Notes: generated by a model from the letters alone, not told the origin. Shown: positions 1 through 32,009, counted from the first letter of the stretch. The stretch is 64,000 nt of DNA from IMGVR_UViG_3300034104_003795:1-64000, one strand, 5' to 3'. Made by a program: numbers and translations.

Positions 1-1615
1 TTCTTACAAAATCATAATAAGCAAAATTAGCTACTTCTCTAAATTCAGGTCTTGCCAATGTTTTACTTAATGAGAATCTATACTTTACTTTATCTAAATT
101 ATAAGAAAGGTTTAATGATGGTAAAATATCTAAATACTCTCTATTCACATTTACTTTACTTCCACTAAAATCTGCGGTATTAACATTGAATAGATTATAC
201 TCACCTCTTAAACCTGTATTTAGTTTCCACTTTCCCCATTCGTTTTCATACATTGAGTAAAGAGAACCTAAATCAAAATCGGCAGTGTATCTATCCGTAT
301 TATTTGTTATTTCATCCAACATATCAGTTGAAAGATATCTGAATATCCTTGCATTAAAGCCTCTAATCTTTTTTAGGTAACCACCACCTATTTTAATTTT
401 ACCAAAATCTTTGTTGATATTACCATTAAAACTATTCTCATCCATTACACTCCAAAAACGATATGTATCTCTCCATGCAGTAGCATAAGGTTCGTTTACA
501 CCTAATGATTTTGTAATTGGATTAACTCTATAATCTGGTTGTTCTCTGAATATAAAATTATATCCTAAATTGAAATCTAATGTTTTAATCTTCCCATCAA
601 ATTGAGAATTGATAACAACATTATTAATATGGTTAGATGAATTACTTAAAACATTTTGAACATTATCAAAGTTATCGCCATTACGAGTTAAATATGTATC
701 ATCCGCCTGATAGTTTACTAATGTTTTCCAGCTATATCGGTTTTTACCTAAATAAGTTAAGTTTAATAAACTATTTGCGGAAAATCTTTTCGTAAACAAA
801 GTATCTCTATAATCATATGCCAATTCAGTTGATGATTGATAATCAGTTCTTTCAATATAATTTAATCCAAATGTATTTCTAATTGTTGAACTAAACAATG
901 CATTAAATTTGTTTTTCTTTAAACCAAATGATAATCCACCATTTAAGTTTGGTGATGATGTAAACCCTTCTACAATTGGATTACCAAATTGTTTTGTGAA
1001 TAATCTTTTATCACCATTACTACTAATACGATATTTGTAAGTGGATGGGAATGTGGAAGGGAATTCGGTAGCTTGAACTAACTTAAAATCTTTAAGAGAT
1101 GAAACCAAACCCCAACCACTTCCCAATGAGATATTGAAAAAGTTATCGGATACTTCTTTTGTTGTAATTTGTACCAATCCACCACTCCAATCGCCCGGTT
1201 GGTTTGCGGATGCTGATTTGGCAACTATAATATTATCAATTAATGATGTTGGAATTATATCAAATGAAAATGCTCTCCTATCAGGTTCGGTTGATGGTAG
1301 GAGTGTTTTGTTTAGGATAGCTGAATTATATCTATCTGCCAATCCTCTTACCAATACAAACTTATCGTTTTGAATTGTTACACCACTTACTCTTTTAAGT
1401 GCATCACCAACATTTCTATCAGGTGTTTTTTTAATAAAATCTATTGATACTCCATCCGATACTACGGATGAATTACGAATGGTTGTTATTACAGCTACTT
1501 CTGTAGATTTCTTACCCGCTGAACGGACTGTAATTGTGGATAGTTGTTTGGAAAATAATGTGTCTTGTGAATACGTTAGAAATGGAAGTAACATTAATAA
1601 AAGAAACGCTCTCAT
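1..1615 (-). CDS. TonB-dependent outer-membrane receptor, Bacteroidota type; runs off the left window edge; absent from ORF track
   Basis: Hand translation from ATG at 1615: MRAFLLLMLLPFLTYSQ signal peptide, then plug-domain motifs DGVSIDFIKKTPDRNVGDALKRVSGVTIQNDKFVLVRGLADRYN and FSFDIIPTSLIDNIIVAKSASANQPGDWSGGLVQITT. Confidence 0.85.
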   Translation of the reverse strand, partial: MRAFLLLMLLPFLTYSQDTLFSKQLSTITVRSAGKKSTEVAVITTIRNSSVVSDGVSIDFIKKTPDRNVGDALKRVSGVTIQNDKFVLVRGLADRYNSAILNKTLLPSTEPDRRAFSFDIIPTSLIDNIIVAKSASANQPGDWSGGLVQITTKEVSDNFFNISLGSGWGLVSSLKDFKLVQATEFPSTFPSTYKYRISSNGDKRLFTKQFGNPIVEGFTSSPNLNGGLSFGLKKNKFNALFSSTIRNTFGLNYIERTDYQSSTELAYDYRDTLFTKRFSANSLLNLTYLGKNRYSWKTLVNYQADDTYLTRNGDNFDNVQNVLSNSSNHINNVVINSQFDGKIKTLDFNLGYNFIFREQPDYRVNPITKSLGVNEPYATAWRDTYRFWSVMDENSFNGNINKDFGKIKIGGGYLKKIRGFNARIFRYLSTDMLDEITNNTDRYTADFDLGSLYSMYENEWGKWKLNTGLRGEYNLFNVNTADFSGSKVNVNREYLDILPSLNLSYNLDKVKYRFSLSKTLARPEFREVANFAYYDFVR

Positions 1616-3007: not shown

Positions 3008-3736
3008 TTATTTAGTGAATACACCTTTTTTAATCATTTTATCTAATATATTTGCACAAGCTATATCTAATGCTTTTTTAGTTGAAATACTAATAGTTGA
3101 TTGGTTAAACTTAATCGGGTCTATTGAAGCATCTGAAACTAATGTTAATTGTCTATTTGTTTTAGCCTCACCCAAACCAGATGCTGCGATGATTGAACCA
3201 TTTTCAGCATTTGTGAAACGAACCTGTAAACCTAAACGAGTTACCAAATTATCTTTGATACCATCTTTTAAATTTATTGTTTCATCTTCGGATACTGAAT
3301 AATCATATACTTCAATTTCAACAAAGTAATGTGCTAATTTAATCTTTCCTCTACCTTCAATTTTGTTTTCAGAAATACCAGCATTTGATGCTTTGAATTG
3401 AGCAACCATTCTGTTCTTAATTTCTGTTTTATCTTCGGTGAATTCAAATCTATTAAGGTTATCCAAATATTCCAATACGATATTTGCAACACCCAATCCA
3501 ACTCTCTTTTCTTTTAATTCAGGATACATTTCGTACACTTCTTCACCAATACCACATTTAAGGATTTGAATATACTTCTTTGGACCTTCGTAATCTAAAT
3601 ATGCAGATATATCTTTCTTTTTTTCAAAATCTGCTTTGAATTCTTCTGTTTTAGTACTTCCTATTGTTTGAGCATGTAGGACACCCACACCACTCGTAAT
3701 TAACAATATACCTAATAATACGATTAATTTTTTCAT
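3008..3736 (-). CDS. CsgG/HfaB-like exported protein
   Basis: Signal peptide ..VLHA-Q; GLGVANIVLEYLDNLNRFEFTE, AHYFVEIEV and LGLQVRFTNAENGSIIAASGLGEA follow the CsgG-family pattern. Confidence 0.65.
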   Translation of the reverse strand: MKKLIVLLGILLITSGVGVLHAQTIGSTKTEEFKADFEKKKDISAYLDYEGPKKYIQILKCGIGEEVYEMYPELKEKRVGLGVANIVLEYLDNLNRFEFTEDKTEIKNRMVAQFKASNAGISENKIEGRGKIKLAHYFVEIEVYDYSVSEDETINLKDGIKDNLVTRLGLQVRFTNAENGSIIAASGLGEAKTNRQLTLVSDASIDPIKFNQSTISISTKKALDIACANILDKMIKKGVFTK

Positions 3737-3792: not shown

Positions 3793-4269
3793 TTACTTTA
3801 CATTTGGGTCTTCTAGATTTTTGATATATTCATCAATCAATCTACTTACTGCTTCAGGCTTTTCATCAGCCTTAAACTTAACCTTTATTTTAGCCATCCC
3901 TGCTTCACTTGGATTATATCCTGAATCAACTTCAATACCTTTGATATTGTGTTCGTATCCTTTTTTCTTAAATAAACCTAATAAAGATTTTTTAAGACTG
4001 GATACTTCCTTTTCTTCATCACCAAATATAAGTCTACAAGTAAACTCAATATCTAGCTCATCTAATCCAATAGATGAATGGTCCGCTAAAATATAAAGAG
4101 GTACAACCAAATCCTTACCACCTATATTAAAGGAAGTAGTTTTGGGTGTACCATCTTCATTGAAATAGTTTCGGAGAGCATTAATATGCTGTCTTTCACT
4201 TATACCTTGAGAAACCATAGCGGCCTCTAATAGACCGCCAACTAGTTCCTCTACATTTAATCTTGCCAT
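3793..4269 (-). CDS. DUF2589-like protein (partner of the adjacent DUF2589)
   Basis: LVGGLLEAAMVSQ..VPLYILADHSSIGLDELDIEF resembles DUF2589 pair members. Confidence 0.55.
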   Translation of the reverse strand: MARLNVEELVGGLLEAAMVSQGISERQHINALRNYFNEDGTPKTTSFNIGGKDLVVPLYILADHSSIGLDELDIEFTCRLIFGDEEKEVSSLKKSLLGLFKKKGYEHNIKGIEVDSGYNPSEAGMAKIKVKFKADEKPEAVSRLIDEYIKNLEDPNVK

Positions 4270-4293
4270 AATATAACCTTTATTTTTTAATTA

Positions 4294-4890
4294 TTACTTT
4301 GCTTCTTCAGTAAGTGGAATTAAAGATGGTTCTAACATTTGAGTTAGGTAATCTGATAATTTCAACATACCTTCAGTTGCTGGTAATTGTTCAGCATGTA
4401 CTTTTACATTGTATTTAGCTGAGTTGTCAGTACTTCTAGTGTTCTCTTTGTTTGTAGCTACTTTACCAGAAATTTTTGCATTCCAGCTCATACCCCAAAA
4501 TCTACCACCAGCTGATACTTCAACACTGCTTTCAGTTTTTACATCACTTTTTTCTGTCTCTGAAGTTTTTACTTCCATAGCAAATTCAATATCTGCTGAA
4601 GTGATTGCTAATGAAGGAAGTGGTACTAATGGTAACATAGGAACTTTACTATACAATTTTTGTATAGTTTGTTGACCTGTTGCACCATCGGTTACAACTC
4701 TGTTCATTTCAACATCTAAAGAACGTGCTTTAGTTTTTTTAGTTTTCTCGTCCGTTACGAATGCTACTTCAGAAATGTATTTCCAAGTTACTTCGTTTAA
4801 TTTTGCTTGACCTTTTGCCATACCAACAATCGGTGAAACAATCAAATCTTCAATAGGAAGACCTGCGAATTGGTCTGCGATACCTGCCAT
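4294..4890 (-). CDS. DUF2589 family protein
   Basis: QFAGLPIEDLIVSPIVGMAKGQAKL..VPMLPLVPLPSLAITSADIEFAMEV..DNSAKYNVKVHAEQ. Confidence 0.7.
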   Translation of the reverse strand: MAGIADQFAGLPIEDLIVSPIVGMAKGQAKLNEVTWKYISEVAFVTDEKTKKTKARSLDVEMNRVVTDGATGQQTIQKLYSKVPMLPLVPLPSLAITSADIEFAMEVKTSETEKSDVKTESSVEVSAGGRFWGMSWNAKISGKVATNKENTRSTDNSAKYNVKVHAEQLPATEGMLKLSDYLTQMLEPSLIPLTEEAK

Positions 4891-5192: not shown

Positions 5193-5220
5193 AAAAAAGG
5201 GAGAAACTATGTTCTCCCTT
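5193..5220 (-). terminator. intrinsic terminator plus ATATTTATA motif
   Basis: GGGAGAA-ACTATG-TTCTCCC. Confidence 0.75.
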
Positions 5221-5257
5221 AAATACTTCCGCCCTTCCTACAGTTAAAGGAAATATA

Positions 5258-5536
5258 TTATCCTAATTCTTCTTCAGTCCCAGCATCCAATTTGTTCTTA
5301 TCGTGTTCCGCTTTTCTATTGATGTACTTATCAACCGAAGCGATACCAAATGCGCCCAATGTGATTACTAAGAATCCGTTGAAAATATATTCGTTGATTA
5401 GTAATTCCTTACCCATATAACCTGTTATCAAGTCTACGAATAATGCAAGTACCATACAACCAAATGATAAGAAACCAACTACTGATTTTTCGTTGATATC
5501 ATTGTTGTCTTTGAATAATTCTTTAAAGAATCCCAT
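5258..5536 (-). CDS. two-TM small membrane protein (holin-like topology)
   Basis: Two hydrophobic segments and a charged C-tail. Confidence 0.5.
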   Translation of the reverse strand: MGFFKELFKDNNDINEKSVVGFLSFGCMVLALFVDLITGYMGKELLINEYIFNGFLVITLGAFGIASVDKYINRKAEHDKNKLDAGTEEELG

Positions 5537-5579
5537 AATTTTACAATTTAATTAATTAATGTAACAATACATAACTAAT

Positions 5580-6239
5580 TTATCCAGCTTGTTCAGCATC
5601 TTCATCTTTAATCTTTCCACACTTCAAACATTCTTCATCGCCATCTCCGTCTAAGTCACCCCAAACGTGCTCACATTGTCTATGTGCAAAATATACATCA
5701 ATCTTACCATCACCATCAAAATCAATACCATCCATTACACCATCACCATCTTCATCTACCTCAATACCGGTTCTTGGTTGAGCTTTAAAAGGGCTTTCAA
5801 TAATGTGAGGATTATTTGGTTCTGATTTTACTTCCACTTTATTTGCTTCGATAAGGTTAATTTCATGTGCGTTTTTTGCAGCTTGTACAAATGCATCTGG
5901 AATCAATGGAGTGTTATTTGGTGGAGTTACAGGCATATCAGCAGTATTGCTTAATGATGTACCATCTTCCTCATCCATCTTTTGTACTAACATCTTATCC
6001 TTATCGGTATCACTAAACCAATAATCTATAATCTTACCATAAGAACCGATGAAAGCTCCTAATAACAATAATAGAAGTTCTTTCCATTCTCCTTCTATTG
6101 CAGATTTGTTAAATATAGCAAAGAACATTCCTGCCATAATAAACATAAATCCACCCAACACCATAGCAGTAATCCACCATCTACGGCTCATCATTTTATT
6201 TAATAGGTCTTTAAACCCACTTGGTTGTTGCTCTGCCAT
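5580..6239 (-). CDS. two-TM membrane protein with C-terminal DxDGDG Ca-binding repeats and Cys/His ligands
   Basis: DEDGDGVMDGIDFDGDGKID, CEHVWGDLDGDGDEECLKC. Confidence 0.6.
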   Translation of the reverse strand: MAEQQPSGFKDLLNKMMSRRWWITAMVLGGFMFIMAGMFFAIFNKSAIEGEWKELLLLLLGAFIGSYGKIIDYWFSDTDKDKMLVQKMDEEDGTSLSNTADMPVTPPNNTPLIPDAFVQAAKNAHEINLIEANKVEVKSEPNNPHIIESPFKAQPRTGIEVDEDGDGVMDGIDFDGDGKIDVYFAHRQCEHVWGDLDGDGDEECLKCGKIKDEDAEQAG

Positions 6240-6262
6240 TTTATATAAATTTTAGTTTTTTA

Positions 6263-6583
6263 TTACCATTCAGCTGGTTTCTCTTTGAATTCATCACCTT
6301 CTTTCTTCTTCTCCTTTGGAGCTGGTGCTGGTTGTGCCGTTCCACCATTTCCACCTTTGTTGATGATTACAGTTTTACCTGCTGCTTGAGATTGTTGGTT
6401 AGAGTTTGTAATGTTAATTACTGGAGCAGCTGCCGGTGCCGGAGTTGCTTCTTTATCATCACCGCCTGTTAATTTTGTTGTGAACCAACCACCCACACCT
6501 AATGTGATAGTTGATACAAGTCCTAATAGTATGTTCTTTATTGAACCACCACCACTTGATTGTTCTTGTTGTTCTTCTGCCAT
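6263..6583 (-). CDS. single-TM protein with low-complexity Pro/Ala/Gln tail
   Basis: ILLGLVSTITLGVGGWF; PAPAAAP. Confidence 0.55.
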   Translation of the reverse strand: MAEEQQEQSSGGGSIKNILLGLVSTITLGVGGWFTTKLTGGDDKEATPAPAAAPVINITNSNQQSQAAGKTVIINKGGNGGTAQPAPAPKEKKKEGDEFKEKPAEW

Positions 6584-6610: not shown

Positions 6611-6982
6611 TTATAACTTATTGAAATCAGTAATACCAATCATCTTACCATTTGCATCATATAGAGCTATTCTATAAGCTGATGCCGGTAAAGCGGTAGT
6701 ATATACTTTTAATATATTATCTCCAGAATTTGCGTACATTGTTTCTTTAGATACTACTCTATTTGCAATATCTAAAATTTTAACTGTCACATTTCCTGCA
6801 GTTTCTAGCTTTACGTTCATAGCCACTTCCGAAGTGACAAATTGAGATTGTAACTTAATACCAGCGGTTGCTGACATTTTTAATTCTGCGTTTGGATTTA
6901 CAGGTTGAATCATATCAATTGGAGATTTTCTACATCCAACCAAGATGATTACTCCAAATAACACTAATAATACTTTTTTCAT
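6611..6982 (-). CDS. lipoprotein with T9SS-CTD/FlgD-like Ig domain
   Basis: Lipobox ILVGC; GNVTVKILDIANRVV..GDNILKVYTTALPASAYRIALYD. Confidence 0.6.
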   Translation of the reverse strand: MKKVLLVLFGVIILVGCRKSPIDMIQPVNPNAELKMSATAGIKLQSQFVTSEVAMNVKLETAGNVTVKILDIANRVVSKETMYANSGDNILKVYTTALPASAYRIALYDANGKMIGITDFNKL

Positions 6983-6994
6983 TTTAATTCTATT

Positions 6995-7348
6995 TTAATT
7001 TATTATCAGTAACGTTTTACCTATTTGGACACTATTCTCATCTTCCAAAGATAAATATAAATATCTAACAGGTAACGATTTTGTGTATAACTTTAAGGAA
7101 TTTTCCCCAATTTTACCAATTATTCTTTCTCTAGTAACTACTTGCTGACCTACTGAATCAAAAAGAGTAAGTGTATATATTCCTTCCGATTTTAAAGTGA
7201 ACTTAAATTGTTCTCCGTTTCCAATAGATGCTTCTTTAACAGAAAATATATCTTCTACTTTTGGTGGTGGGGTTGGTTCTACTTCTACTTTTCTACAAGA
7301 GATTATAAAAACAACACAACACAATAAGATTAATATTAACTTTTTCAT
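6995..7348 (-). CDS. lipoprotein with T9SS-CTD/FlgD-like Ig domain (paralogue of neighbour)
   Basis: Lipobox IISC; YTLTLFDSVGQQV..GENSLKLYTKSLPVRYLYLSLED. Confidence 0.6.
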   Translation of the reverse strand: MKKLILILLCCVVFIISCRKVEVEPTPPPKVEDIFSVKEASIGNGEQFKFTLKSEGIYTLTLFDSVGQQVVTRERIIGKIGENSLKLYTKSLPVRYLYLSLEDENSVQIGKTLLIIN

Positions 7349-9636
7349 TATTTCATTTTTACTTTTAATGTGTTTCCGCTTTTATTTACTGCATCGGTGA
7401 ATGAAATTGAAATTAAACCTAATACATTGTTCAATTTTGTTTGTGGTTTGAAACTGATTTTATATTCGGTAGTATTATCTAAAACCCCACCATCAGTAAT
7501 TAAAGAACCAAAATTTACATAATCACCTTTATCAGTTCCATAATTAGTTGGTGACCCCTTTGTCTTATAAGATACACTACTAAATTTCAATAAACTATTA
7601 TCGTAATTTAATTTGAATTGAGTTCCAACTAATTCTTGTTGTAATGGGTCAATCTTAATATATGCAGTAACACTATCTCCAATAATTTCAGTTATTATAG
7701 ATGCGTTTATTTGATTTGATATTGGTAAACTCATTGGTATAACACTCATACTTCTAATAGAAGAACCTGATATCGCAGGTGGAGTTTGTTGTGCTGAATG
7801 TGATAAATTTACATCACCTTTCCAAGTTACACTAACATTATATGTGTTATTAAGTGTTCCACTATTCAAATTAAATGGATATAAACTTCTAGTGTAATTG
7901 AATTGTGTATTCCAATTTGATTTTGTAATCGCATCATATTCCGATTTTCCATACAACTTCATCAAATAAGTTAATGTTGAATATTCATTAATAGGTTGTA
8001 CACCTATTAAATGTTGTAATAATTTATAGGTATCGGTTTCATTAAATACACCATTACCATCTACATCTGCGTTCATAAATTGAATACCAGATGTAAACTC
8101 TAATCCACTTTCGTTTCCAAATATTCCACTATTTGATAATTCTTTAAATGCCAAATACACATCGGATACACTTACTACACTACTATATAAATTATTTAGT
8201 TCGGTTTGATTAGTATATGATAAATCAATTCCATGTTGCTTAAACATCACATTAGGTGTAAATGTAAACTCTGCACTCAACCCCCAAAAAAATCCAGCTC
8301 TTCTTATATTAGATGAAAATGATGAACCTGCAAAATTAAGTTCCGTTGGTGTATAAATCCAATATGCGGCCCAAGTTCCATCATCCCATTGATAAGTTAC
8401 AGCCCCATTCCACAAATCAAATAATTGTAAACTTGTAACACTACTTGCTGAAGTACCTTGTGGGAATTCTCTTTTATCAATTAGGATTTGATATCTTTGG
8501 GATTGTGATTCATAATCATATACTACGCACCATTCTACTTGTCCGCCTGATGTTGTTGCTCTAACACCATTACCATTTACCTTTACAGTATCTAAATCAT
8601 TTGTTAAATCAACTTTACCTAATCCACTTATAGCTCTTGATGTGTTAGTTGTTGTTCCCCACACATTGTTTACAAAAGTATTTGCTTTTGCTGTAAATTT
8701 AGTTTCATCTACATTACTTCCAAAATCAAAATTAAATCTTGCTGTTAATACTTCCCCATTTGAATGTGTTACTGAATTTGTATAGAATTCTGTAAATGTT
8801 GCATCATCAGGGTTAGTCCAAGTTCCGTATTCAATTACATAAGGGCAACTAAATCCATTCGGTAAATCATTCCATTGAGAACCGTTCCATTTTGTTACCG
8901 CATAATCTTCGTTACCACTATTGTTTGGTTCACCAGGTGCCCAGTTATTATATTGACCTTGTATGTTTCCGGCTGTTTGTCCGTTTGATGTTTTTATTAG
9001 AGTTCCAGCTTCAGGACCGGCATCAATTCTCCATTGTCCCTCAACAGCTTCATCCGTTAATGCAAACCAAATGTTTGTTTGTGGAACATTGTTAAACACA
9101 AACGCATCTTCATCTGCGGAAGTGATTGTTACCAAATATCCTTGTTGCCCTTTAAATGTGGTATTTAACGCTGCCGCCCTTGCACCCGTATAACTTGTTC
9201 CTGTTGATATTGGTCTATAAAAATGACCATTTGTTCCATTGTAAAAGAACCCCGTTGGATTAACCGTAGCTGCTACCGATAATGCAATATTACCTCTTAC
9301 TGAACCTGTGTTTACTTTTAAAGATGCTAATGCCGTATTGATATTAGCCATTGTTCCCGTTACCACTAAACGAGTCTTATTACCTGCTAATGTAAATCCA
9401 CTAGCTGCAGTTAGACCTGTTGTTGTGGTTAAGTTAAATGTAGTACCTGTTGGTGGATTAACTAAACTGATTGAAGCTAATAGAGTTGCGGTTGAACCAA
9501 ATCCACTCAATACAAACCCACTCGCATCTTGTCCGTTTGTGGATGGTAAAAAAGATTTAGAGTCCGGTGCAGATACACTCTGACCGAACCCTAAATTTGT
9601 AATTAATAAAAATAAAAATATTAATAAGTTTCTCAT
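7348..9636 (-). CDS. exported multidomain protein: C-type lectin, dockerin-like repeat, C-terminal cohesin-like domain
   Basis: Signal peptide; GYLVTITSADEDAF..WFALTD..YNNWAPGEPNNSGNEDYAVTKWNGSQWNDLP (CTL); ADVDGNGVFNETDTYKLLQHLIG; WKGDVNLSH; LVGTQFKLNYDNSLLKF. Confidence 0.7.
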   Translation of the reverse strand: MRNLLIFLFLLITNLGFGQSVSAPDSKSFLPSTNGQDASGFVLSGFGSTATLLASISLVNPPTGTTFNLTTTTGLTAASGFTLAGNKTRLVVTGTMANINTALASLKVNTGSVRGNIALSVAATVNPTGFFYNGTNGHFYRPISTGTSYTGARAAALNTTFKGQQGYLVTITSADEDAFVFNNVPQTNIWFALTDEAVEGQWRIDAGPEAGTLIKTSNGQTAGNIQGQYNNWAPGEPNNSGNEDYAVTKWNGSQWNDLPNGFSCPYVIEYGTWTNPDDATFTEFYTNSVTHSNGEVLTARFNFDFGSNVDETKFTAKANTFVNNVWGTTTNTSRAISGLGKVDLTNDLDTVKVNGNGVRATTSGGQVEWCVVYDYESQSQRYQILIDKREFPQGTSASSVTSLQLFDLWNGAVTYQWDDGTWAAYWIYTPTELNFAGSSFSSNIRRAGFFWGLSAEFTFTPNVMFKQHGIDLSYTNQTELNNLYSSVVSVSDVYLAFKELSNSGIFGNESGLEFTSGIQFMNADVDGNGVFNETDTYKLLQHLIGVQPINEYSTLTYLMKLYGKSEYDAITKSNWNTQFNYTRSLYPFNLNSGTLNNTYNVSVTWKGDVNLSHSAQQTPPAISGSSIRSMSVIPMSLPISNQINASIITEIIGDSVTAYIKIDPLQQELVGTQFKLNYDNSLLKFSSVSYKTKGSPTNYGTDKGDYVNFGSLITDGGVLDNTTEYKISFKPQTKLNNVLGLISISFTDAVNKSGNTLKVKMK

Positions 9637-11318
9637 TAGTCTACTACAAGTTCTATCTTCTTACCAGTCGCATCAACAGCATCTGCTAGTACAAAGAAGA
9701 ATAAACCGGCAGTATTGCTTAATGGAACTTTTGGTGTGAAGATTAATTTATATGGAATACCAGTTTTGATTCTAGAAACTTTTATTTGGTCAATAGAACC
9801 AAATGTCAATCTACCATTATCATGCGTTGAGAAATTGGTGATTGTAGAACCAGCATCAAATATTACATTATCTAATGTTAATTTTGTTGAATCATAATTC
9901 ATAATAACCTGTAAACCCGCTAAACCTTCTTTGGTTAATCTAGTACTTAAAACAACTTTACCACCTTCTAATGTAGATACTACACTTAAAGATGCTTGTT
10001 CTAATTTAGCACTTTCATATGAATTTGATTGATATGAAGTCATTGCCATTGTTGACATACTCTTTATAGTAGCAACATCCGATGTACCAGGATTAGCTGC
10101 ATTTGTAAAGATACCACTTGCTATTCTTGCAGCTACAGTATCAGGATGAGATGAATGTGACCAATCCAAATCACCACCCCATGCAAATACAGCATCCACA
10201 GTTTGTGCAGGTTGTGTAACATATACTCTATATTTTGAAGTACCATCTAACCAACTCTGATTTAACAATCCACTATTCCATCTCCAAGAAGTTGCAGTTG
10301 ATGTTGGTATAAATGCGTTAGCCGATACGTCTTGTCCCATTACATAAGCAAATGCGTAATAAGAATCTGCTTCGGTGAAGGTCATATCATTTTTAGTAAT
10401 ATTACCAATTTTCTTTTCTAAATTTGGTCTTGTGAAATAATTTGCAACACCACTAATATCAGTTTGTGAAACACCTAAGAATGATTTGTATGCATCTGAT
10501 ACAGTTATAACATTGTTCATCCAAGTCTTTTGTGATGCAGGTGATACAAATACACCTAATGAATCACCAACTTTAATACCAGAAGTAAATAAGGCTTCAC
10601 CACTACCATCTAATGCTCTTTGTGCAATAGGTTGTTGTGACCAATCTATATCACCAGTACCATCGGTTTTTAATTTCATTAATTGAATGTTATGGTCAGC
10701 AATATTATATCCAGATGGAAATAATACTCTTACTTTAAAGAAAGAAGTATTACCAGTCACTCCGGTAATTGATAAAGGACCGGATGTTGTTTTTACATAT
10801 GGAATATTTGCACCAGTAGCACTATCTAAAGCATATGATAAATCCAATTTATGAAAGTTTTGATAAGTGTTTTGGTCTTTAATGATATACTTTTGTGTTG
10901 CTATCACACCATTTACCGATTGGTCTGCTCTTTGAACTGCTAATTGTCCAACATTCCAATCTGCATTTACAGCATATCCCCAAGGTGTAGTGGTATATTG
11001 ACCATATAAAGATGTATCACTCACATTTGCATTTGAGGTGAACTTATAGTTAGTCCAACCGGTATAATAAGTTTGTGATTGACTACCTTGTGAGAAAGCA
11101 GTAGATACATAAGTTAAAGCCTTATTATTAAATTGATATCTTAACCAAAAATAACGTGGTTTAGTTACACCTTTATCTACACTATATGTTACGGTTACAG
11201 TATCACCAACTTTATAAGGTCCTGCTGAAATAGATTGGTTTACAACTATTTGCGCTTCTGTCTTAAATGTTAATAGGGATATCACCAATACCCCTAAAAA
11301 TGTTAATAGTTTTTTCAT
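9636..11318 (-). CDS. exported protein with degenerate dockerin-like and C-terminal cohesin-like domains
   Basis: Signal peptide ..TEA-Q; ITVSDAYKSFL; WGGDLDWSHS; GLAGLQVIMNYDSTKLTLDNV. Confidence 0.6.
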   Translation of the reverse strand: MKKLLTFLGVLVISLLTFKTEAQIVVNQSISAGPYKVGDTVTVTYSVDKGVTKPRYFWLRYQFNNKALTYVSTAFSQGSQSQTYYTGWTNYKFTSNANVSDTSLYGQYTTTPWGYAVNADWNVGQLAVQRADQSVNGVIATQKYIIKDQNTYQNFHKLDLSYALDSATGANIPYVKTTSGPLSITGVTGNTSFFKVRVLFPSGYNIADHNIQLMKLKTDGTGDIDWSQQPIAQRALDGSGEALFTSGIKVGDSLGVFVSPASQKTWMNNVITVSDAYKSFLGVSQTDISGVANYFTRPNLEKKIGNITKNDMTFTEADSYYAFAYVMGQDVSANAFIPTSTATSWRWNSGLLNQSWLDGTSKYRVYVTQPAQTVDAVFAWGGDLDWSHSSHPDTVAARIASGIFTNAANPGTSDVATIKSMSTMAMTSYQSNSYESAKLEQASLSVVSTLEGGKVVLSTRLTKEGLAGLQVIMNYDSTKLTLDNVIFDAGSTITNFSTHDNGRLTFGSIDQIKVSRIKTGIPYKLIFTPKVPLSNTAGLFFFVLADAVDATGKKIELVVD

Positions 11319-11319
11319 C

Positions 11320-11976
11320 TTACTTTGCGTTTTTACCGAATAGTTTTTTAATCAAACTATCCGATGCTTTTTTAAGGGCGTTGCTTAAGGATGTTTGATT
11401 GAATTTACCACCCTGGTCAACGATTAACGTAGACATTGATATTTCAGATGAACTTTCTTCCACCACCACTTCTTTCTCTTTCTTTCCATCTTTATAAAGA
11501 ATACCCTGTAGTCTTACAACCACTTCTTCTTCTCCTTTATGAAAAACTGAAATATTTGTTTTTGTAGATAACACATCCAAATAAACAATATTTACTTTTA
11601 ATTTGTATGGTGCATCCGGAGCTAAATCATATCCTTTTTCCTGAAGATATTCTTCTAATATATTTTTTACCCCAAATGCCAAATTACGATTTCCGGCTAA
11701 TTTACCAATCTTAACCTGGTTTTCAACACCTTCAACCCAAACGTGGTCTGATTCTTCATACCAAATATTTTCTGGATTATTTTTGAATGTACCGTCAATT
11801 CTATGAGTAATTTCATTAGAGAGTTCGGTAGCCCATTGTTCTCTACCACTAATTTGTAGAAATACAAAGAACAATTGGAATACGAGTGCAAATCCTATAA
11901 AAAGACCAACACCCAGTAAAAACATTTTGAACAATAACTCTTTAAAGTTCAAAACAGTTGATTTAATGTATTGCAT
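11320..11976 (-). CDS. membrane-anchored CsgG/TolB-N-like protein
   Basis: N-terminal TM; GNRNLAFGVKNILEEYLQEKGY and FNQTSLSNALKKA parallel the 3008 protein. Confidence 0.45.
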   Translation of the reverse strand: MQYIKSTVLNFKELLFKMFLLGVGLFIGFALVFQLFFVFLQISGREQWATELSNEITHRIDGTFKNNPENIWYEESDHVWVEGVENQVKIGKLAGNRNLAFGVKNILEEYLQEKGYDLAPDAPYKLKVNIVYLDVLSTKTNISVFHKGEEEVVVRLQGILYKDGKKEKEVVVEESSSEISMSTLIVDQGGKFNQTSLSNALKKASDSLIKKLFGKNAK

Positions 11977-12134: not shown

Positions 12135-12500
12135 TTATAAATTTCTTAATTTATAGAGGGTAGAATATATTAACTTTTCAACATTATCAACTTCATTTTG
12201 AATCCAACTCGCTGATAATTCTTCGGTTTTTCTATTTGTTTGTACAAATTTTAATAGGTCTTCAAAGTATTCAATGATATTCTCAATTGATGCATCGTTA
12301 TCAATTCCCTTTACTGCTTTGAATTCAATCAAACCCGCCATTCCTTGATAACCTTCTACTAAACCATCTATTAATCCTACTATACCATCGTAGTATGCTT
12401 CTAAAGCAAGATGTGGAGCTAATCCGTTTGGAGATACTCTTAAATGAAACACATGCGCCTGTGTTCTGCTGTGTAATAACATTGAAGCTAAATCTGTCAT
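12135..12500 (-). CDS. ferritin/Dps-like four-helix protein (DUF5856-type phage family)
   Basis: HSRTQAHVFH..HLALEAYYDGIVGLIDGLVEGYQG..IQNEVDNVEKLIYSTLYKL. Confidence 0.65.
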   Translation of the reverse strand: MTDLASMLLHSRTQAHVFHLRVSPNGLAPHLALEAYYDGIVGLIDGLVEGYQGMAGLIEFKAVKGIDNDASIENIIEYFEDLLKFVQTNRKTEELSASWIQNEVDNVEKLIYSTLYKLRNL

Positions 12501-14066: not shown

Positions 14067-14648
14067 TTAAATTACACTCCATCCTTTTTGTAGGTAAGAA
14101 TCAACCTTTTTGCTTTTTACAAATTCCATTTCACCCGCAGGTCCTTGTAACATAACTCTTTCATTTCTACCAGGTGCTTTATCTTTTGTAATAGTTTCTG
14201 AATATTGACGAGTTGGATGTGTAATATCAATACCATCAATTGCATCCAAAGCCCGTTGTACTAACACAGCTTCCAATAAGCCGGCATCACTAAAAAATTC
14301 ATCAGCACTTTTCCAATCAAATGTTTCACTCGTTGCTTTAAATTCAACTTTTCCCAAATTATCGGTTTCCAATACTATCCAAGGGTAACGAATTGTTTTT
14401 CTAACTTTATTTTCTTTATATGTATCTTTTTCAAAATATACCAATGGTCTATCTGATAATGATATTACTTTTGGGTTTACCAAAGTTAATTCATCTTCTT
14501 TATTTCCCAATCGTATAGTAATGATTCGTTTATCAATTAATACATCCGCGGCACTAAATACAATGCCTTCTAAAGAAGATATCAATGATTTATACGAAGA
14601 AACATCTTCGGCAGATATTGGAGCCTCACTAATTTTTTTTATTTTCAT
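14067..14648 (-). CDS. peptide-deformylase-like protein with all catalytic motifs degenerate, plus SEC-C-like tail
   Basis: GIVFSAADV, LVNPKVI, EKDTY, QRALDAIDGI line up with PDF motifs 1-3; PGRNERV tail. Confidence 0.6.
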   Translation of the reverse strand: MKIKKISEAPISAEDVSSYKSLISSLEGIVFSAADVLIDKRIITIRLGNKEDELTLVNPKVISLSDRPLVYFEKDTYKENKVRKTIRYPWIVLETDNLGKVEFKATSETFDWKSADEFFSDAGLLEAVLVQRALDAIDGIDITHPTRQYSETITKDKAPGRNERVMLQGPAGEMEFVKSKKVDSYLQKGWSVI

Positions 14649-14649
14649 T

Positions 14650-14913
14650 TTATTTATTTTTATATTTAATAGTATTTTCAAAAAATTCTTTATCAATTAA
14701 TTTCCATTTATTTGCAGGGCAAGCATTTTCAACTGGCGAATATATCTTACCGCTCAACGGACACCCACACAATCCGCATCTTGCAAAAGCAATTACTTGC
14801 TTATGTTCACATGAATTACAAATATCCATTCTTAAAGATGCTAACTGTTTTTGTGCTTCATTTGGATTGAATGAAGTTTTCCATGCTTTAAAAATTTCTT
14901 CAACTTTATTCAT
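14650..14913 (-). CDS. Cys-rich metal-binding small protein
   Basis: CNSC..CGLCGCP..CPANKW. Confidence 0.55.
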   Translation of the reverse strand: MNKVEEIFKAWKTSFNPNEAQKQLASLRMDICNSCEHKQVIAFARCGLCGCPLSGKIYSPVENACPANKWKLIDKEFFENTIKYKNK

Positions 14914-15484: not shown

Positions 15485-16408
15485 TTAATTACTTAAAGGT
15501 GCTTTAATTGTTGGGTGTGATTGATATCCTTCTAATATGAAATCATCAGGTGTATTACAACATATACCGTCTATCTTTGCATCAGTTTTTAATTGTGGTA
15601 AATCAAATGATTCTCTACTGATTTGTTCTTTTGCCTGTTGGATATGGTTTAAATACAAATGAGTATCACCTAAATTACCAATCAATTCATCAGGTACCAT
15701 ATTCACTTCATTCGCTATAATATGTAACAATAATCCATATGAAGCAATATTAAATGGTAATCCTAAAAACGTATCCACACTTCTTTGATTCCACATTAAC
15801 GAAATTGCTCTTTTAGGTATATTTAATTCATCCAATTTAGATTCATCAAAATCTTCTGCGTAGTAAATACTTTTATTTATAGAATCGGTAAAATATTTTT
15901 TTCTTTCTTCAAAGCTTAATTCTCTTGTATAAACTTGGAATCCATAATGACAAGGCGGTAATACCATTTGGTCTAACTCACCTACATTCCAAGCACTCAC
16001 CATTAATCTTCTACTATCTGGATTTTCTTTTAAGTTTGTAACCAAATCATGTATCTGGTCAATCTTACCATTACTACCATTCCACTGTCTCCATTGTTTA
16101 CCATATATAGGTCCTAATTCACCGTCAGTTCTTCCACTCTTTTCATAATCACCATCCCATATATGATTATTATGTTTATGTAAAAAAGAAATATTAGTTT
16201 GACCTGTTAGAAACCAAAGTAGTTCCGATACAACTTGCTTCCACGCTAATTTTTTTGTTGTAAGAGCCGGAAATCCATCTTTCATATTATGTCTGATAGT
16301 GTATCCGAAAATAGATTTAGTACCAGTTCCGGTTCTATCTTTTTTCTCAACACCATAGTTGATAATAGTTTCTAATAATTCTTTATATTGTTTATCTAAA
16401 TTATTCAT
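15485..16408 (-). CDS. thyA: thymidylate synthase
   Basis: DRTGTGT, LGPIYGKQWR, LPPCH, QRSVDTFLGLPFNIASY, HLYLNH. Confidence 0.97.
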   Translation of the reverse strand: MNNLDKQYKELLETIINYGVEKKDRTGTGTKSIFGYTIRHNMKDGFPALTTKKLAWKQVVSELLWFLTGQTNISFLHKHNNHIWDGDYEKSGRTDGELGPIYGKQWRQWNGSNGKIDQIHDLVTNLKENPDSRRLMVSAWNVGELDQMVLPPCHYGFQVYTRELSFEERKKYFTDSINKSIYYAEDFDESKLDELNIPKRAISLMWNQRSVDTFLGLPFNIASYGLLLHIIANEVNMVPDELIGNLGDTHLYLNHIQQAKEQISRESFDLPQLKTDAKIDGICCNTPDDFILEGYQSHPTIKAPLSN

Positions 16409-31700: not shown

Positions 31701-32009
31701 AGATTAGATTTGAATTTCACACAAGATGTTTATATCAAAGTTAAAGATACAAAACATACTTTAAGATTCACAGCCGATATCTATAACTTCACAAACTTCA
31801 TCAGCAAAGATTGGGGTGTAAACCAAACTCCAACAACTGTAACTCCACTTAACTTCGTAAGATTGGATACTGATGGAAAAACTCCGGTATTCTCATTCCC
31901 TTATTTAGATGGAAGAAACAAAGTTCCGTTTACTGATTCATTCAGAGATAACGTAGGATTTAGTTCTCGCTACCAAATTCAATTGGGTGTAAGATATATC
32001 TTTAACTAA
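28749..32009 (+). CDS. TonB-dependent receptor with N-terminal carboxypeptidase-regulatory-like domain (Oar-like)
   Basis: Signal peptide; GRYNLPNLKIGGPYSI; LDGANFNNSFGL; ISLDAIEQIQVNVSPFDV..GGSINTVTRSG; C-terminal IQLGVRYIFN. Confidence 0.92.
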   Translation: MKKIGKFLLMVVITLLSFGASAQETTSEIQGLVSDGKAGLAGVTIVATHQPTGTKYSTSSRTDGRYNLPNLKIGGPYSIHVTSIGFKAEHQDDITLLLGQSHKANFILKEASTTLKEVVVTSGQSKVFNSSRNGSQEIINRQLIERIPNVNRSWKDLVKLVPSQNNLSFGGLSSQLNNVTLDGANFNNSFGLGDGTLGGQTGAQPISLDAIEQIQVNVSPFDVKFGGFAGGSINTVTRSGKNQSFGSVYQFFKNKDLQGYKVGDVTLPKQDFTYDLKGFTAGGAIVKNKLFFFVNGEQESRMEPGTQWVASDANNTPNGINVSQAKAADLDALRKFLIEKYNYDPGAYQGYQYGSVSKRLTTKLDWNINSKNSFSLKYTLLRSSADIPASNSQSVNASNGRRPSTTSMPFYGGGYTINNNADIIIGELNTRFSNNASNKLQIGYTKLRDFRGTLTSGNFPQVDILDGNGQPFTTFGYERFTYGNVLNSDVIQLNNIFNLYKGKHEFTFGTQNSFKKYSNGFSPNYAGAFRFNSLADFYASAEGTKPAAAYDLSWSLTGDFPLVGPKNTELSLFAQDKFRVKDNLTITYGLRADYVSFADNFLYNPVVDTLSKFYDGVRLNTGLAPKNALQLSPRIGFNWDVNNDQTLQVRGGTGLFQGPPPFVWISNQASNSGMALFGSITNATGYMFNPDINAYRPTPTPGLSRAYSLNVTDPNYKFPQVWKSTLAVDKKVLGWTVTAEGTYIKNINATVFQNVALPSTGNITLSDGRTRFIKRSVYDATGTAQTSANPNIGNAIYMTNANVGYVLFGTLQVQRQFKNLAVNASYTRQTAKDGTINGSTAFTMWGARPTSTNPNNFEEGFSNNYLPHRIIGSFVYGKEFIKNTRTSIGLLYEASPNSPQSSLSYTYAGDLNNDGFNGNDLIFVPKDASQIKLTNASAVGGVADTRTQEELWNQLDAFISNNKYLSTRRGQFAERQALVLPWVHRLDLNFTQDVYIKVKDTKHTLRFTADIYNFTNFISKDWGVNQTPTTVTPLNFVRLDTDGKTPVFSFPYLDGRNKVPFTDSFRDNVGFSSRYQIQLGVRYIFN

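What the first reader, a model, noticed from the sequence alone, without database searches (positions are those of the whole stretch)
7348..11318. Adjacent cohesin/dockerin scaffold proteins, one carrying a C-type lectin
Seen: both proteins end with a GD(V/L)(N/D)xSHS motif, a Ser/Met-rich linker and a cohesin-like domain (G-x-Q-x-x-x-N-Y-D). The 762-aa protein has a clear dockerin-like Ca loop (DVDGNGVFNETD) and a C-type lectin (WAPGEPNN..WND). A cohesin plus a dockerin on each chain would allow head-to-tail polymerisation. Inference: a self-assembling glycan-binding fibre or lattice.
Basis: partly seen in the sequence, partly recalled or inferred. Interest (0 to 1): 0.65.

Follow-up and report, generated by a model that had tools for sequence, protein, structure and literature searches.

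The report
Phage-encoded secreted cohesin/dockerin-like lectin pair
Two neighbouring genes of a 274-kb bacteriophage, probably infecting a Bacteroidota host, encode exported modular proteins built from cohesin and dockerin-like assembly modules, one of them carrying a calcium-type sugar-binding head; this looks like a small viral version of the bacterial "cellulosome" building kit used at the infected cell's envelope, but whether the modules bind each other could not be tested.

Summary
The two overlapping minus-strand genes (762 aa and 560 aa) share a homologous C-terminal module. It consists of dockerin-like helices, an invariant GDxNxSHS motif, a flexible linker and a domain with a clear cohesin fold (Z 13.3).

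- **762-aa protein:** it has a Pfam-significant C-type lectin domain with a complete, invariant EPN/E/WND sugar site. It also has one canonical dockerin-type Ca loop.
- **560-aa protein:** Its dockerin-like loops are degenerate.
the window is part of a complete 274-kb jumbo tailed phage. Both proteins have Sec signal peptides that expose Gln at +1, the Bacteroidetes Q-rule. They sit in a conserved eight-gene operon of membrane proteins and lipoproteins.
- **Family:** it appears virus-only. It has conserved anchoring parts and swappable heads (C-type lectin, PA14/GLEYA, LCCL). Structural sister proteins carry a T9SS sorting domain.

My reading is an envelope-targeted, phage-encoded cohesin/dockerin-like lectin assembly. 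Membership in Dockerin_1 is below threshold. I rate it a new variant of a known kind, of moderate to high interest.

The parts
11320..11976 (-). 218-aa protein with an N-terminal TM or signal segment and a weak Lipoprotein_16-like region; first gene of the operon. Conserved upstream of the module protein in divergent phages.
   Evidence: Homologues lie directly upstream in L013, L016, L021 and L023.
9636..11318 (-). 560-aa 'class A' protein: signal peptide, N-terminal cohesin, beta domain with a helical dockerin-like insert, SHS motif, linker, C-terminal cohesin.
   Evidence: AF2 model with pLDDT 87.9 and pTM 0.76; fold searches; domain HMMs.
11253..11318 (-). Signal peptide of the 560-aa protein (residues 1-22), cleaved TEA|Q. 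Gln23 is invariant.
   Evidence: Q23 is invariant in A3.
10752..11252 (-). N-terminal cohesin-fold domain of the 560-aa protein (residues 23-189).
   Evidence: VIA Z 13.3, rmsd 2.2-2.4 A over about 130 residues to cohesins 2vo8, 2vn5, 4uyp and 6kgc.
10284..10532 (-). Dockerin-like helical region of the 560-aa protein (residues 263-345; helices 273-284, 298-305, 316-326). Its Ca loops are degenerate.
   Evidence: secondary structure; 99.5% homologous to the 762-aa region; loop residues.
10152..10175 (-). GDLDWSHS motif of the 560-aa protein (residues 382-389).
   Evidence: D383, S387, H388 and S389 are invariant or at least 90% conserved in A3.
9999..10151 (-). Flexible linker of the 560-aa protein (residues 390-440), containing the TIKSMS motif.
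   Evidence: pLDDT is below 50 at residues 410-437.
9639..9998 (-). C-terminal cohesin domain of the 560-aa protein (residues 441-560).
   Evidence: hhalign gives 99.9% to the 762-aa cohesin. 29 of 52 family members hit Pfam Cohesin. The A3 profile hits PDB cohesins, E 2.7e-5.
7348..9636 (-). 762-aa 'class B' protein: signal peptide, beta domain, C-type lectin, beta sandwich, dockerin-like module, SHS motif, linker, cohesin.
8821..9231 (-). C-type lectin domain (residues 136-272) with WFALTD, EPN (236-238), E243 and WND (255-257).
   Evidence: Lectin_C 29.1 bits, above the cut-off. PDB C-type lectins match at E 1.7e-5. The site residues are invariant in 36 homologues.
8239..8586 (-). Beta-sandwich domain (residues 351-466) preceding the dockerin-like module; shared by class B relatives.
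   Evidence: pLDDT is above 90. The '762_sandw' HMM hits in P0342, P0359, P0361, P0371, P0380, P0384 and P0386.
7957..8238 (-). Dockerin-like module of the 762-aa protein (residues 467-560). The canonical F-hand loop DVDGNGVFNETD is at residues 524-535 (window 8032-8067).
   Evidence: Dockerin_1 scores 15.0 and 19.5 bits, below the 22.9 cut-off. The segment aligns to dockerin repeats of 8x39, 1ohz_B and 4uyp_B. The loop is conserved in all class B representatives.
7795..7818 (-). GDVNLSHS motif of the 762-aa protein (residues 607-614).
   Evidence: G607, D608, N610, S612, H613 and S614 are invariant.
7351..7719 (-). C-terminal cohesin domain of the 762-aa protein (residues 640-762).
   Evidence: VIA Z 13.3, rmsd 2.2 A over 120 residues; the top 21 rows are all cohesins. 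Foldseek E 5e-6. Pfam Cohesin 25.5 bits.
6995..7348 (-). 117-aa lipoprotein (lipobox ...IISC|RKVEVE), translationally coupled to the 762-aa gene by a TAATG overlap. Candidate membrane anchor.
   Evidence: Homologues follow the module protein in L013, L015, L016, L021, L022 and L023.
6611..6982 (-). 123-aa paralogous lipoprotein (…LVGC|RKS); a small beta sandwich with weak DUF3244 and Por_Secre_tail-like hits.
5197..6583 (-). Remaining operon genes: a 106-aa TM protein (6263-6583), a 219-aa TM protein with acidic Ca-loop-like repeats (5580-6239) and a 92-aa two-TM protein (5258-5536). A terminator-like hairpin lies at 5220-5197.

Best explanation
**What it is.** The two genes belong to a jumbo tailed phage of a Bacteroidota host. 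They encode a pair of Sec-exported, non-enzymatic modular proteins that form a viral, non-cellulosomal cohesin/dockerin-like assembly system.
- The 560-aa protein is a scaffold-type chain: cohesin, beta domain with a dockerin-like helical insert, GDxDxSHS motif, linker, cohesin.
- The 762-aa protein is the ligand-binding chain: beta domain, Ca-dependent C-type lectin of the EPN (Man/Glc/GlcNAc/Fuc) type, beta sandwich, dockerin-like module with one intact Ca loop, GDVNLSHS motif, linker, cohesin.

**How it is made.** Both are made from one eight-gene operon, translationally coupled to each other and to a small lipoprotein, together with conserved inner- and outer-membrane proteins.

**Proposed mechanism.**
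1. After export and signal-peptide cleavage (Gln+1 converted to pyroGlu by the host), the chains associate through cohesin and dockerin-like contacts into a small hetero-oligomer. The contacts would be 762-Doc with a 560 cohesin and/or the C-terminal cohesins with the Doc-like modules.
2. The co-translated lipoprotein and membrane proteins tether this oligomer to the envelope.
3. The complex presents the lectin head to a glycan of the host envelope.
4. Because the heads are swapped between relatives (C-type lectin, PA14/GLEYA, LCCL) while the anchoring parts are conserved, the ligand is probably a strain-variable surface or cell-wall glycan. The likely benefit is receptor masking, superinfection exclusion, or adhesion of infected cells.

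**Shown versus inferred.**
- Shown: domain identities, homology of the shared module, export signals, operon structure, synteny, head swapping, and virus-only distribution.
- Inferred: that the modules bind each other, the stoichiometry, the cellular location, the ligand and the benefit to the phage.
For: **Phage identity.**
- The record is a complete 273,997-bp virus.
- It has a T4-type DNA polymerase, collagen-like tail fibres and SbcCD, plus a helicase, a ligase and ThyA.

**Cohesin folds.**
- 762 C-terminus: Z 13.3, rmsd 2.2 A over 120 residues; 21 top rows are cohesins. Foldseek E 5e-6.
- 560 N-terminus: Z 13.3.
- Cohesin dyad and Coh-X-Doc constructs rank among the top Foldseek rows for the 560-aa model.
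- Pfam Cohesin reaches 25.5 bits. 29 of 52 family members match it, best E 3.3e-10. Several class B representatives are over the cut-off.

**Dockerin-like module.**
- Hits to Dockerin_1 are recurrent but below threshold.
- The segment aligns to PDB dockerin repeats.
- A D-x-D/N-x-D/N-G-x-F-N/D-x-x-D loop is conserved in all class B and many class A representatives.
- The AF2 model shows three helices.

**Shared module homology:**

**Lectin:**

**Export.**
- Signal peptides are predicted.
- Gln is at +1 in 5 of 5 SPase-I-type phage proteins, and Q23 is invariant. This is the Q-rule of PMC5837995.

**Operon and coupling.**
- TAATG overlaps link the genes.
- A terminator-like hairpin lies at 5220-5197.

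**Synteny.** The order [218-aa homologue]-[module protein(s)]-[small lipoprotein] holds in close and distant phages.

**Head swapping:**

**Virus-only distribution.**
- All ESM-atlas and BFVD neighbours are viral.
- Only 163 clusters are found among 1.84 billion representatives.
- No real hit appears in 185,579 species genomes.
Against:
- Dockerin_1 is below Pfam's cut-off. The first F-hand is degenerate in the 762-aa protein and both are degenerate in the 560-aa protein, so canonical Ca-dependent dockerin binding may be lost.
- The dockerin-like helices are an insert inside a beta domain (X1-helices-X2). This topology differs from known X-Doc modules.
- In more distant phages a single module protein occurs without a partner, so the hetero-pair is not a family-wide requirement.
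- The proteins lack any recognised route across the outer membrane: no T9SS CTD and no lipobox.
- The AF2 model of the 762-aa protein is poor outside two domains, so the lectin fold itself rests on sequence only.
Confidence: 0.5

Rival explanations
1. Each chain has one dockerin and one cohesin, and the chains polymerise head-to-tail (homo- or hetero-typically) into a free glycan-binding fibre or lattice.
For: - Both chains carry a Doc-like module and a C-terminal cohesin, separated by a 25-50-residue flexible linker.
- Distant phages with a single module protein would need homotypic or cis contacts if the modules bind at all.
- Tandem Doc+Coh small proteins recur in atlas neighbours.
Against: - Binding was not tested.
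- The linker is long enough for intramolecular (cis) closure, which would prevent polymerisation.
- The 560-aa protein has two cohesins and a degenerate dockerin, so it is not a simple 1:1 monomer.
- The conserved lipoprotein and membrane partners argue for an anchored complex.
Confidence: 0.15
2. The cohesin-fold and dockerin-like parts do not bind each other. They would be spacer, stability or carbohydrate-binding modules of two independently acting secreted adhesins or lectins. The partner of the C-terminal cohesin, if any, would be the small lipoprotein or a host protein.
For: - The Ca loops are degenerate and the Dockerin_1 scores are below threshold.
- CBM2/CBM-type beta sandwiches also appear among the Foldseek hits of the C-terminal domain at E about 2e-4.
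- The most conserved gene partnership is module protein plus small lipoprotein, not class A plus class B.
- Pilin- or adhesin-like stalk matches appear at Z 9-10.
Against: - Cohesins fill the top of every structural list, well above the other folds.
- The F-hand loop and the helices are strictly conserved in class B, which suggests a functional Ca-dependent element.
- The Doc-like plus cohesin combination is kept together across the whole family.
Confidence: 0.2
3. The proteins are surface-displayed cargo of the host type IX secretion pathway, or of a phage-encoded outer-membrane route. The C-terminal cohesin would act as, or replace, the sorting/anchoring domain. The LES-bearing lipoproteins would be surface anchors.
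For: - The closest structural relative among viral proteins is annotated 'Secretion system C-terminal sorting domain' (A0A6J5M064, 636 aa, E 7e-21).
- ESM-atlas sister clusters carry Por_Secre_tail in 72-98% of members, together with Cohesin and Dockerin_1.
- The overall layout (Sec signal, passenger domains, linker, C-terminal beta sandwich) mirrors T9SS cargo.
- The lipoproteins show C-x-K-(D/E)-type N-termini resembling the LES of PMC5080379.
- The phage encodes outer-membrane barrels.
Against: - No Por_Secre_tail or TIGR04183 signal is found in either protein or anywhere in the phage at threshold.
- No member of A3 matches Por_Secre_tail.
- The C-terminal domain is a cohesin fold, not the 3+4 Ig-like CTD.
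- The atlas links score 0.86-0.88 with TM about 0.5, so they are leads only.
Confidence: 0.1
4. The cassette is an auxiliary nutrient-capture system, analogous to a polysaccharide-utilisation locus. Lectin-bearing surface glycan-binding proteins would feed the phage-encoded TonB-dependent receptors.
For: - Two TonB-dependent-receptor-like genes lie in the same 32 kb, and one lies next to the cassette in a distant relative.
- The system combines glycan-binding heads with lipoproteins.
Against: - There is no SusD-like gene and no glycoside hydrolase in the operon.
- Rapid head swapping and divergence fit strain-variable ligands better than a nutrient polymer.
- The TBDR genes are not in the same operon.
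Confidence: 0.07
5. The proteins are virion components, such as capsid decoration or fibres, anchored by the cohesin module.
For: Lectin- and Ig-like decoration proteins are common in large phages. The architecture has a conserved anchor and a variable head.
Against: - The signal peptides are cleavable, with an invariant Gln+1.
- The genes lie among membrane-protein and nucleotide-metabolism genes, far from the fibre and large structural genes at 135-260 kb.
- There are no PHROG structural hits.
Confidence: 0.03

Closest known systems
Non-cellulosomal cohesin-dockerin systems of secreted glycan-active proteins: Clostridium perfringens GH84C/GH33 cohesins (PDB 2w1n, 2vo8, 2jh2, 2o4e) and the Archaeoglobus fulgidus cohesin (2xdh)
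   Same: - The cohesin fold is the same: these entries are among the very best structural matches.
- The modules sit on secreted, non-cellulolytic, carbohydrate-recognising proteins.
- Cohesin and dockerin-type modules lie on the same or neighbouring gene products. That the A. fulgidus proteins combine both is from my own knowledge and was not checked here.
   Different: - The genes are viral and the family appears virus-only.
- There is no enzyme domain.
- The dockerin is degenerate, with at most one F-hand, and is inserted in a beta domain.
- There is an extra invariant GDxNxSHS motif.
- The genes are coupled to a lipoprotein and membrane-protein operon.
Cellulosomal scaffoldins, e.g. C. thermocellum CipA Coh9-X-DocII (3kcp, 4fl4) and the A. 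cellulolyticus ScaA cohesin dyad (3l8q)
   Same: - The 560-aa protein has two cohesins. Its first 385 residues superpose on the Coh plus X part of 3kcp_A (Z 12.7, 215 residues).
- The A3 profile hits 3l8q by sequence (E 2.7e-5).
- Flexible S/T/P-type linkers lie between the modules.
   Different: - There is no CBM3.
- No dockerin-bearing enzymes exist anywhere in the phage genome.
- There are only two cohesins.
- The inferred host is Gram-negative Bacteroidota.
- The function is not polysaccharide degradation.
Uncultured Caudovirales phage protein A0A6J5M064 ('Secretion system C-terminal sorting domain', 636 aa) and ESM-atlas viral clusters with Cohesin + Dockerin_1 + Por_Secre_tail
   Same: - The predicted architecture matches over the full length (Foldseek E 7e-21 over 605 columns; TM about 0.5).
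- They are viral.
- They combine the same cohesin and dockerin families.
   Different: - Those proteins carry a T9SS type A sorting domain that the window's proteins lack.
- No sequence-level link was recovered by HMMER.
C-type lectin domain protein of Flavobacterium phage vB_FspM_immuto (MW353175-7)
   Same: It is the only cultured-phage match: 34-36% identity over residues 136-300, the lectin domain. It is also a large phage of a Bacteroidota host.
   Different: Only the lectin domain is shared. No cohesin or dockerin-like module is present, and the 560-aa protein has no match at all among 50,697 phage records.

Membership tests
Cohesin (Pfam PF00963) | Match to the family HMM at or above the gathering score (24.1 bits) | tested here: met
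   - 762 C-terminus: 21.0 bits in the whole-protein scan but 25.5 bits in the six-frame domain scan.
- 29 of 52 members of the 560 family match at E <= 0.01, best 3.3e-10.
- P0371, P0373, P0375 and P0380 are over the cut-off.
- The window's own 560-aa protein gives no hit by itself; it is linked by 99.9% hhalign probability.
Cohesin (Pfam PF00963) | Nine-stranded beta-sandwich (jelly-roll) cohesin fold | tested here: met
   - 762 residues 640-762: Z 13.3, rmsd 2.2 A, 120 aligned to 2vn5_A; ranks 1-21 are all cohesins. Foldseek E 5e-6.
- 560 residues 22-189: Z 13.3, rmsd 2.2-2.4 A, about 130 aligned.
Cohesin (Pfam PF00963) | Binds a dockerin partner | not tested
No experiment was possible.
Dockerin type I (Pfam PF00404) | Match to the family HMM at or above the gathering score (22.9 bits) | tested here: not met
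   - 762-aa protein: 15.0 bits and 19.5 bits over profile positions 10-56.
- 560-aa protein: no hit.
- 1 of 52 A3 members matches at E 0.0097; P0361 matches at E 0.02.
Dockerin type I (Pfam PF00404) | Two tandem F-hand Ca loops (D/N at positions 1, 3, 5 and 12), each followed by a helix | tested here: not met
   - 762-aa protein: the second loop D524-V-D-G-N-G-V-F-N-E-T-D535 is canonical and conserved. The first loop (N-N-L-Y-S-S-V-V-S-V-S-D) keeps only position 12 and possibly 1 and 5.
- 560-aa protein: both loops are degenerate.
- Some distant class A members keep a canonical second loop.
Dockerin type I (Pfam PF00404) | Three-helix dockerin fold | tested here: inconclusive
   - The AF2 model of the 560-aa protein shows helices 273-284, 298-305 and 316-326 at high pLDDT.
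- The equivalent 762-aa region was modelled at pLDDT about 30.
C-type lectin (Pfam PF00059) | HMM match at or above the gathering score (22.6 bits) | tested here: met
   29.1 bits over residues 163-267. PDB C-type lectins (CD23, CLEC4F, aggrecan, MBP, langerin) match at E 1.7e-5 to 1e-3.
C-type lectin (Pfam PF00059) | Ca-site-2 / sugar-binding residues (EPN or QPD, a Glu, WND) | tested here: met
   E236-P237-N238, E243 and W255-N256-D257 are present. They are invariant in 36 homologues at 77-100% identity.
C-type lectin (Pfam PF00059) | Conserved disulfide-forming cysteines of the CTLD | tested here: not met
   Only one Cys (C264) lies in residues 136-272 (sequence).
T9SS cargo (type A CTD; PF18962 / TIGR04183) | C-terminal sorting domain recognised by the family models | tested here: not met
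   - No hit in either protein at E <= 0.1.
- The best match in the phage genome is 9.2 bits, in the 123-aa lipoprotein.
- No member of A3 matches.
T9SS cargo (type A CTD; PF18962 / TIGR04183) | N-terminal Sec signal peptide and a Bacteroidota host | tested here: met
   Signal peptides are predicted and Gln is at +1 in 5 of 5 cases. The Q-rule is from PMC5837995.
Cellulosome | Dockerin-bearing enzymes recruited to a multi-cohesin scaffoldin carrying a CBM | tested here: not met
   There are no further dockerin or cohesin matches in the 274-kb genome, and no glycoside hydrolase or CBM in the operon.

The most novel reading that the evidence does not exclude
This would be the first viral cohesin-dockerin assembly system. 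A jumbo Bacteroidota phage would build, on or in the envelope of the infected cell, a Ca-dependent, lipoprotein-anchored lectin array from a two-cohesin scaffold and exchangeable lectin-headed subunits (C-type lectin, PA14 or LCCL). The array would coat a strain-specific host glycan, giving receptor masking, superinfection exclusion or cell adhesion. The invariant GDxNxSHS motif would serve as a new Ca or processing site.
Probability: 0.25. Interest if true: 0.8.

Novelty: new variant of a known kind. Interest (0 to 1): 0.6.

Why it matters
- Cohesin-dockerin pairs are the classic high-affinity building kit of bacterial cellulosomes and are widely used in synthetic biology. A phage-specific, highly abundant family (more than 3000 metagenomic relatives of each protein) that joins these modules to swappable lectin heads would extend the system to viruses and to Gram-negative envelopes.
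- It would point to a so far undescribed way in which large phages remodel the surface or periplasm of Bacteroidota hosts.
- It could supply new orthogonal binding pairs.
- The cassette, with its conserved membrane parts and fast-evolving glycan-binding heads, is a tractable candidate locus for superinfection exclusion or receptor masking in environmental jumbo phages.

Tried and rejected
- **Complex prediction:** the job was 560 residues 23-400 against 438-560. No interface test exists, and this is neither support nor evidence against binding.
- **PHROGs:** no family for either protein or four neighbours.
- **blastn against phages:** no match.
- **tblastn of the 560-aa protein against 50,697 phage records:** no match.
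- **NCBIfam:** nothing meaningful.
- **AF2 of the 762-aa protein with a shallow alignment:** poor model (mean pLDDT 52). The lectin, N-terminal and dockerin-like regions of this protein remain unmodelled.
- **The search for related loci with the diverse alignment A3:** failed because there was no conserved stretch.
- **Scan of genome contigs:** gave a single 37-residue match in a Bacteroidetes MAG contig. On inspection the contig encodes unrelated bacterial genes, so I rejected it as host evidence.
- **PDB searches for the 242-aa, 218-aa and 219-aa neighbours:** nothing significant.
- **Literature searches:** no description of this family was found.
- **CohN versus CohC profile comparison:** not significant by sequence (probability 13-20%), so their relation rests on fold only.
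- **Sigma-70 promoter scan:** fewer hits than in shuffles, and the consensus does not apply to Bacteroidota.
- **Genetic code:** no alternative code was used or needed.

Full report
**Context.** The window is the first 64 kb of a 273,997-bp virus record rated complete. It has about 31% G+C and almost all genes lie on the minus strand. The record encodes:
- a T4-type DNA polymerase, collagen-like tail-fibre proteins and SbcCD;
- a helicase, an ATP-dependent ligase and thymidylate synthase.

It is therefore a jumbo tailed phage. Joining the end of the record to its start gives one uninterrupted 1450-residue frame, so the record is circularly permuted. No alternative genetic code was needed.

**The observation.** The two ORFs are present as described: 7348-9636 (762 aa) and 9636-11318 (560 aa), both on the minus strand.
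- GDVNLSHS (762: residues 607-614) and GDLDWSHS (560: residues 382-389);
- S/M-rich linkers;
- GTQFKLNYD and GLQVIMNYD;
- DVDGNGVFNETD (762: residues 524-535);
- WAPGEPNN...WND (762: residues 232-257).

The resemblance between the two chains is homology, not chance:
- BLASTP aligns 762:591-759 with 560:348-557 at E 3e-11.
- Profile-profile comparison of sub-alignments gives 99.9% (E 3e-31) for the C-terminal domains, 99.5% (E 4e-22) for the helical region upstream, and 96% (E 2e-9) for the SHS segment.
- No third copy of the module exists in the genome.

**Domain identities: cohesin and lectin.**
- Lectin_C is significant: 29.1 bits against a cut-off of 22.6. PDB C-type lectins match at E 1.7e-5.
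- The complete Ca/sugar site (E236-P-N238, E243, W255-N-D257) is invariant in 36 homologues. The canonical cysteines are missing.
- The C-terminal domain of the 762-aa protein is a cohesin by fold. It reaches Z 13.3 with rmsd 2.2 A over 120 residues, the first 21 rows of an unbiased search of 48,161 chains are all cohesins, and Foldseek gives E 5e-6.
- By sequence it scores 21.0 and 25.5 bits around the 24.1 cut-off.
- For the 560-aa protein a diverse alignment (A3, 52 sequences at 20-93% identity) gave a confident AF2 model with pLDDT 87.9 and pTM 0.76.
- In this model the N-terminal domain (residues 22-189) is a second cohesin fold (Z 13.3, rmsd 2.2-2.4 A).
- The first 385 residues of the model superpose on the cohesin and X-module part of CipA (3kcp_A, Z 12.7).
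- At family level, 29 of 52 members match Pfam Cohesin, best E 3.3e-10. The A3 profile finds PDB cohesins at E 2.7e-5.

**Domain identities: the dockerin-like part.** This assignment is weaker.
- Dockerin_1 reaches only 15.0 and 19.5 bits against a cut-off of 22.9.
- The segment NADVDGNGVFNETDTYKLLQHLIG aligns to individual dockerin repeats in PDB (8x39, 1ohz_B, 4uyp_B).
- The loop pattern D-x-D/N-x-D/N-G-x-F-N/D-x-x-D is conserved in every class B representative and in many distant class A ones.
- The first repeat keeps only its helix and the position-12 Asp.
- In the window's 560-aa protein both loops have lost ligands.
- In the AF2 model the region forms three helices (273-284, 298-305, 316-326). 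They are inserted between two halves of a beta domain, which is not the known X-Doc order.

I therefore call it dockerin-like and do not file it as a member of Dockerin_1.

**Family and evolution.**
- Each protein has more than 3000 metagenomic relatives.
- An exhaustive HMM search of 1.84 billion 50% representatives found only 163 clusters. The family is abundant but narrow.
- All language-model and structural neighbours are viral.
- Cultured phages share only the lectin domain, in Flavobacterium phage immuto.
- A scan of 185,579 species genomes gave only a spurious hit.
- Domain HMMs split the representatives into two classes. Class A is cohesin, beta domain, Doc-like, SHS, cohesin; the 560-aa protein belongs here. 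Class B is variable head, beta sandwich, Doc-like, SHS, cohesin; the 762-aa protein belongs here.
- The class B heads are C-type lectin, PA14/GLEYA or LCCL. All three are ligand- or glycan-binding adhesin domains.
- The most conserved element of the whole family is [WF]xGD[VIL][ND]xSHS. It is unexplained.

**Genomic setting.**
- Both proteins have N-terminal signal peptides.
- All five SPase-I-type signal peptides I found in the phage expose Gln at +1, and Q23 is one of seven invariant columns in A3. This is the Bacteroidetes Q-rule (PMC5837995). Together with the Bacteroidota-type TonB-dependent receptors, it indicates a Bacteroidota host.
- The genes form a tight operon from about 11976 to a terminator-like hairpin at 5220-5197. 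The gene order is 218 aa (TM), 560 aa, 762 aa, 117 aa and 123 aa (lipoproteins), 106 aa and 219 aa (TM), and 92 aa (two TM).
- TAATG stop/start overlaps link the 560/762 and 762/117 junctions.
- The order is identical in relatives at about 75% identity.
- In distant phages, the 218-aa homologue, one module protein and one small lipoprotein remain adjacent, usually with overlapping start and stop. Homologues of the 106-aa, 219-aa and 242-aa proteins follow.
- The membrane parts are far better conserved (E 1e-64 to 1e-101) than the module proteins (E 1e-14).
- The lipoproteins begin C-x-K-(D/E)-like. The pattern is perfect in three loci (CEKDE, CSKEE, CAKDD) and partial in the window. It resembles the surface-export signal K-(D/E)2 of Capnocytophaga (PMC5080379). 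This is a lead, not a test.

**Relation to T9SS.**
- The best viral structural match is a 636-aa uncultured-phage protein annotated as carrying a T9SS sorting domain (E 7e-21).
- ESM-atlas sister clusters combine Cohesin, Dockerin_1 and Por_Secre_tail.
- The window's proteins end with the cohesin and have no detectable CTD.
- How they would leave the periplasm, if they do, is therefore open.

**Interpretation.** The best-supported reading is a phage-encoded, Sec-exported, envelope-associated cohesin/dockerin-like assembly. It would present a Ca-dependent lectin, with the 560-aa chain as a two-cohesin scaffold and the small lipoprotein as a likely anchor. Conserved anchoring parts together with exchangeable glycan-binding heads suggest a strain-variable envelope glycan as ligand. 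The role would be receptor masking, superinfection exclusion or adhesion.

Shown here: the domains, the homology, the export signals, the operon, the synteny, the head swapping and the viral distribution.

Inferred only: mutual binding, stoichiometry, location, ligand and benefit to the phage. The decisive in-silico test was not available.

The linkers allow cis closure, and the conserved partners point to an anchored complex. The rivals are listed separately: non-interacting structural modules, T9SS-type surface cargo, a PUL-like nutrient system, and virion components.

**Novelty.** Cohesins and dockerins outside cellulosomes are known, for example the C. perfringens toxin complexes and A. 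fulgidus; the latter example is from my own knowledge. Automatic annotations of viral proteins already carry these Pfam labels. I found no description of this phage family, its two-class architecture, its operon or its SHS motif. I rate it a new variant of a known kind, with interest 0.6.

Noticed in passing
window 28749-32009 (+); window 2-1615 (-) continuing across the record end (G000 271269-273997): The phage encodes TonB-dependent-receptor-like outer-membrane proteins. One is a complete 1086-aa CarboxypepD_reg + Plug + OMP_b-brl_4 protein. The other has Plug + OMP_b-brl_3, and its frame runs across the record ends (1450 aa when the ends are joined), which shows the record is circularly permuted. 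A distant relative (L023) also has an 823-aa TBDR near the cassette.
   Followed up: partly
window 2-1615, 3008-3736, 7348-9636, 9636-11318, 28749-32009 (N-termini): All five signal-peptidase-I-type signal peptides expose Gln at +1 (YS|Q, HA|Q, FG|Q, EA|Q, SA|Q). This matches the Bacteroidetes Q-rule and serves as a sequence-only host-phylum indicator for this uncultured phage.
   Followed up: partly
window 5580-6239 (-): This 219-aa membrane protein is very conserved (E 1e-90 to a distant phage). It has tandem acidic loops DEDGDGVMDGIDFDGDGKID and a Cys-rich tail (CEHVW...CLKCGK). Only insignificant EF-hand similarity was found. It could be a Ca-binding partner in the same operon.
   Followed up: partly
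window 6995-7348 and 6611-6982 (-): These are two paralogous small lipoproteins. Their homologues follow the module protein in every related locus examined. Their mature N-termini (C-x-K-acidic) resemble the Bacteroidetes lipoprotein surface-export signal.
   Followed up: partly
762: residues 605-614 (window 7795-7824); 560: residues 380-389 (window 10152-10181); linkers 7720-7794 and 9999-10151: The invariant motif [WF]xGD[VIL][ND]xSHS lies directly before the flexible linker. A short conserved [IV][RK]S[MF]S motif lies inside the otherwise variable linker. Their function (Ca site or processing site) is unknown.
   Followed up: no
window 3008-3736 (-): This 242-aa secreted protein has no family match but is extremely conserved (E 1e-101 to 1e-134) next to the cassette in distant phages (L016, L023).
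   Followed up: no
window 3793-4890 (-), 12135-12500 (-), 14067-14696 (-), 15485-16408 (-): Other genes seen here are two DUF2589 proteins, a DUF5856 protein, a peptide deformylase-like gene and thymidylate synthase. In relatives a UvdE endonuclease lies next to them (L013).
   Followed up: no
G000 185836-221843 (-): There are three giant ORFs of 3069, 3729 and 4184 aa, and a further one of 2479 aa at 255527-262966. They were not examined.
   Followed up: no
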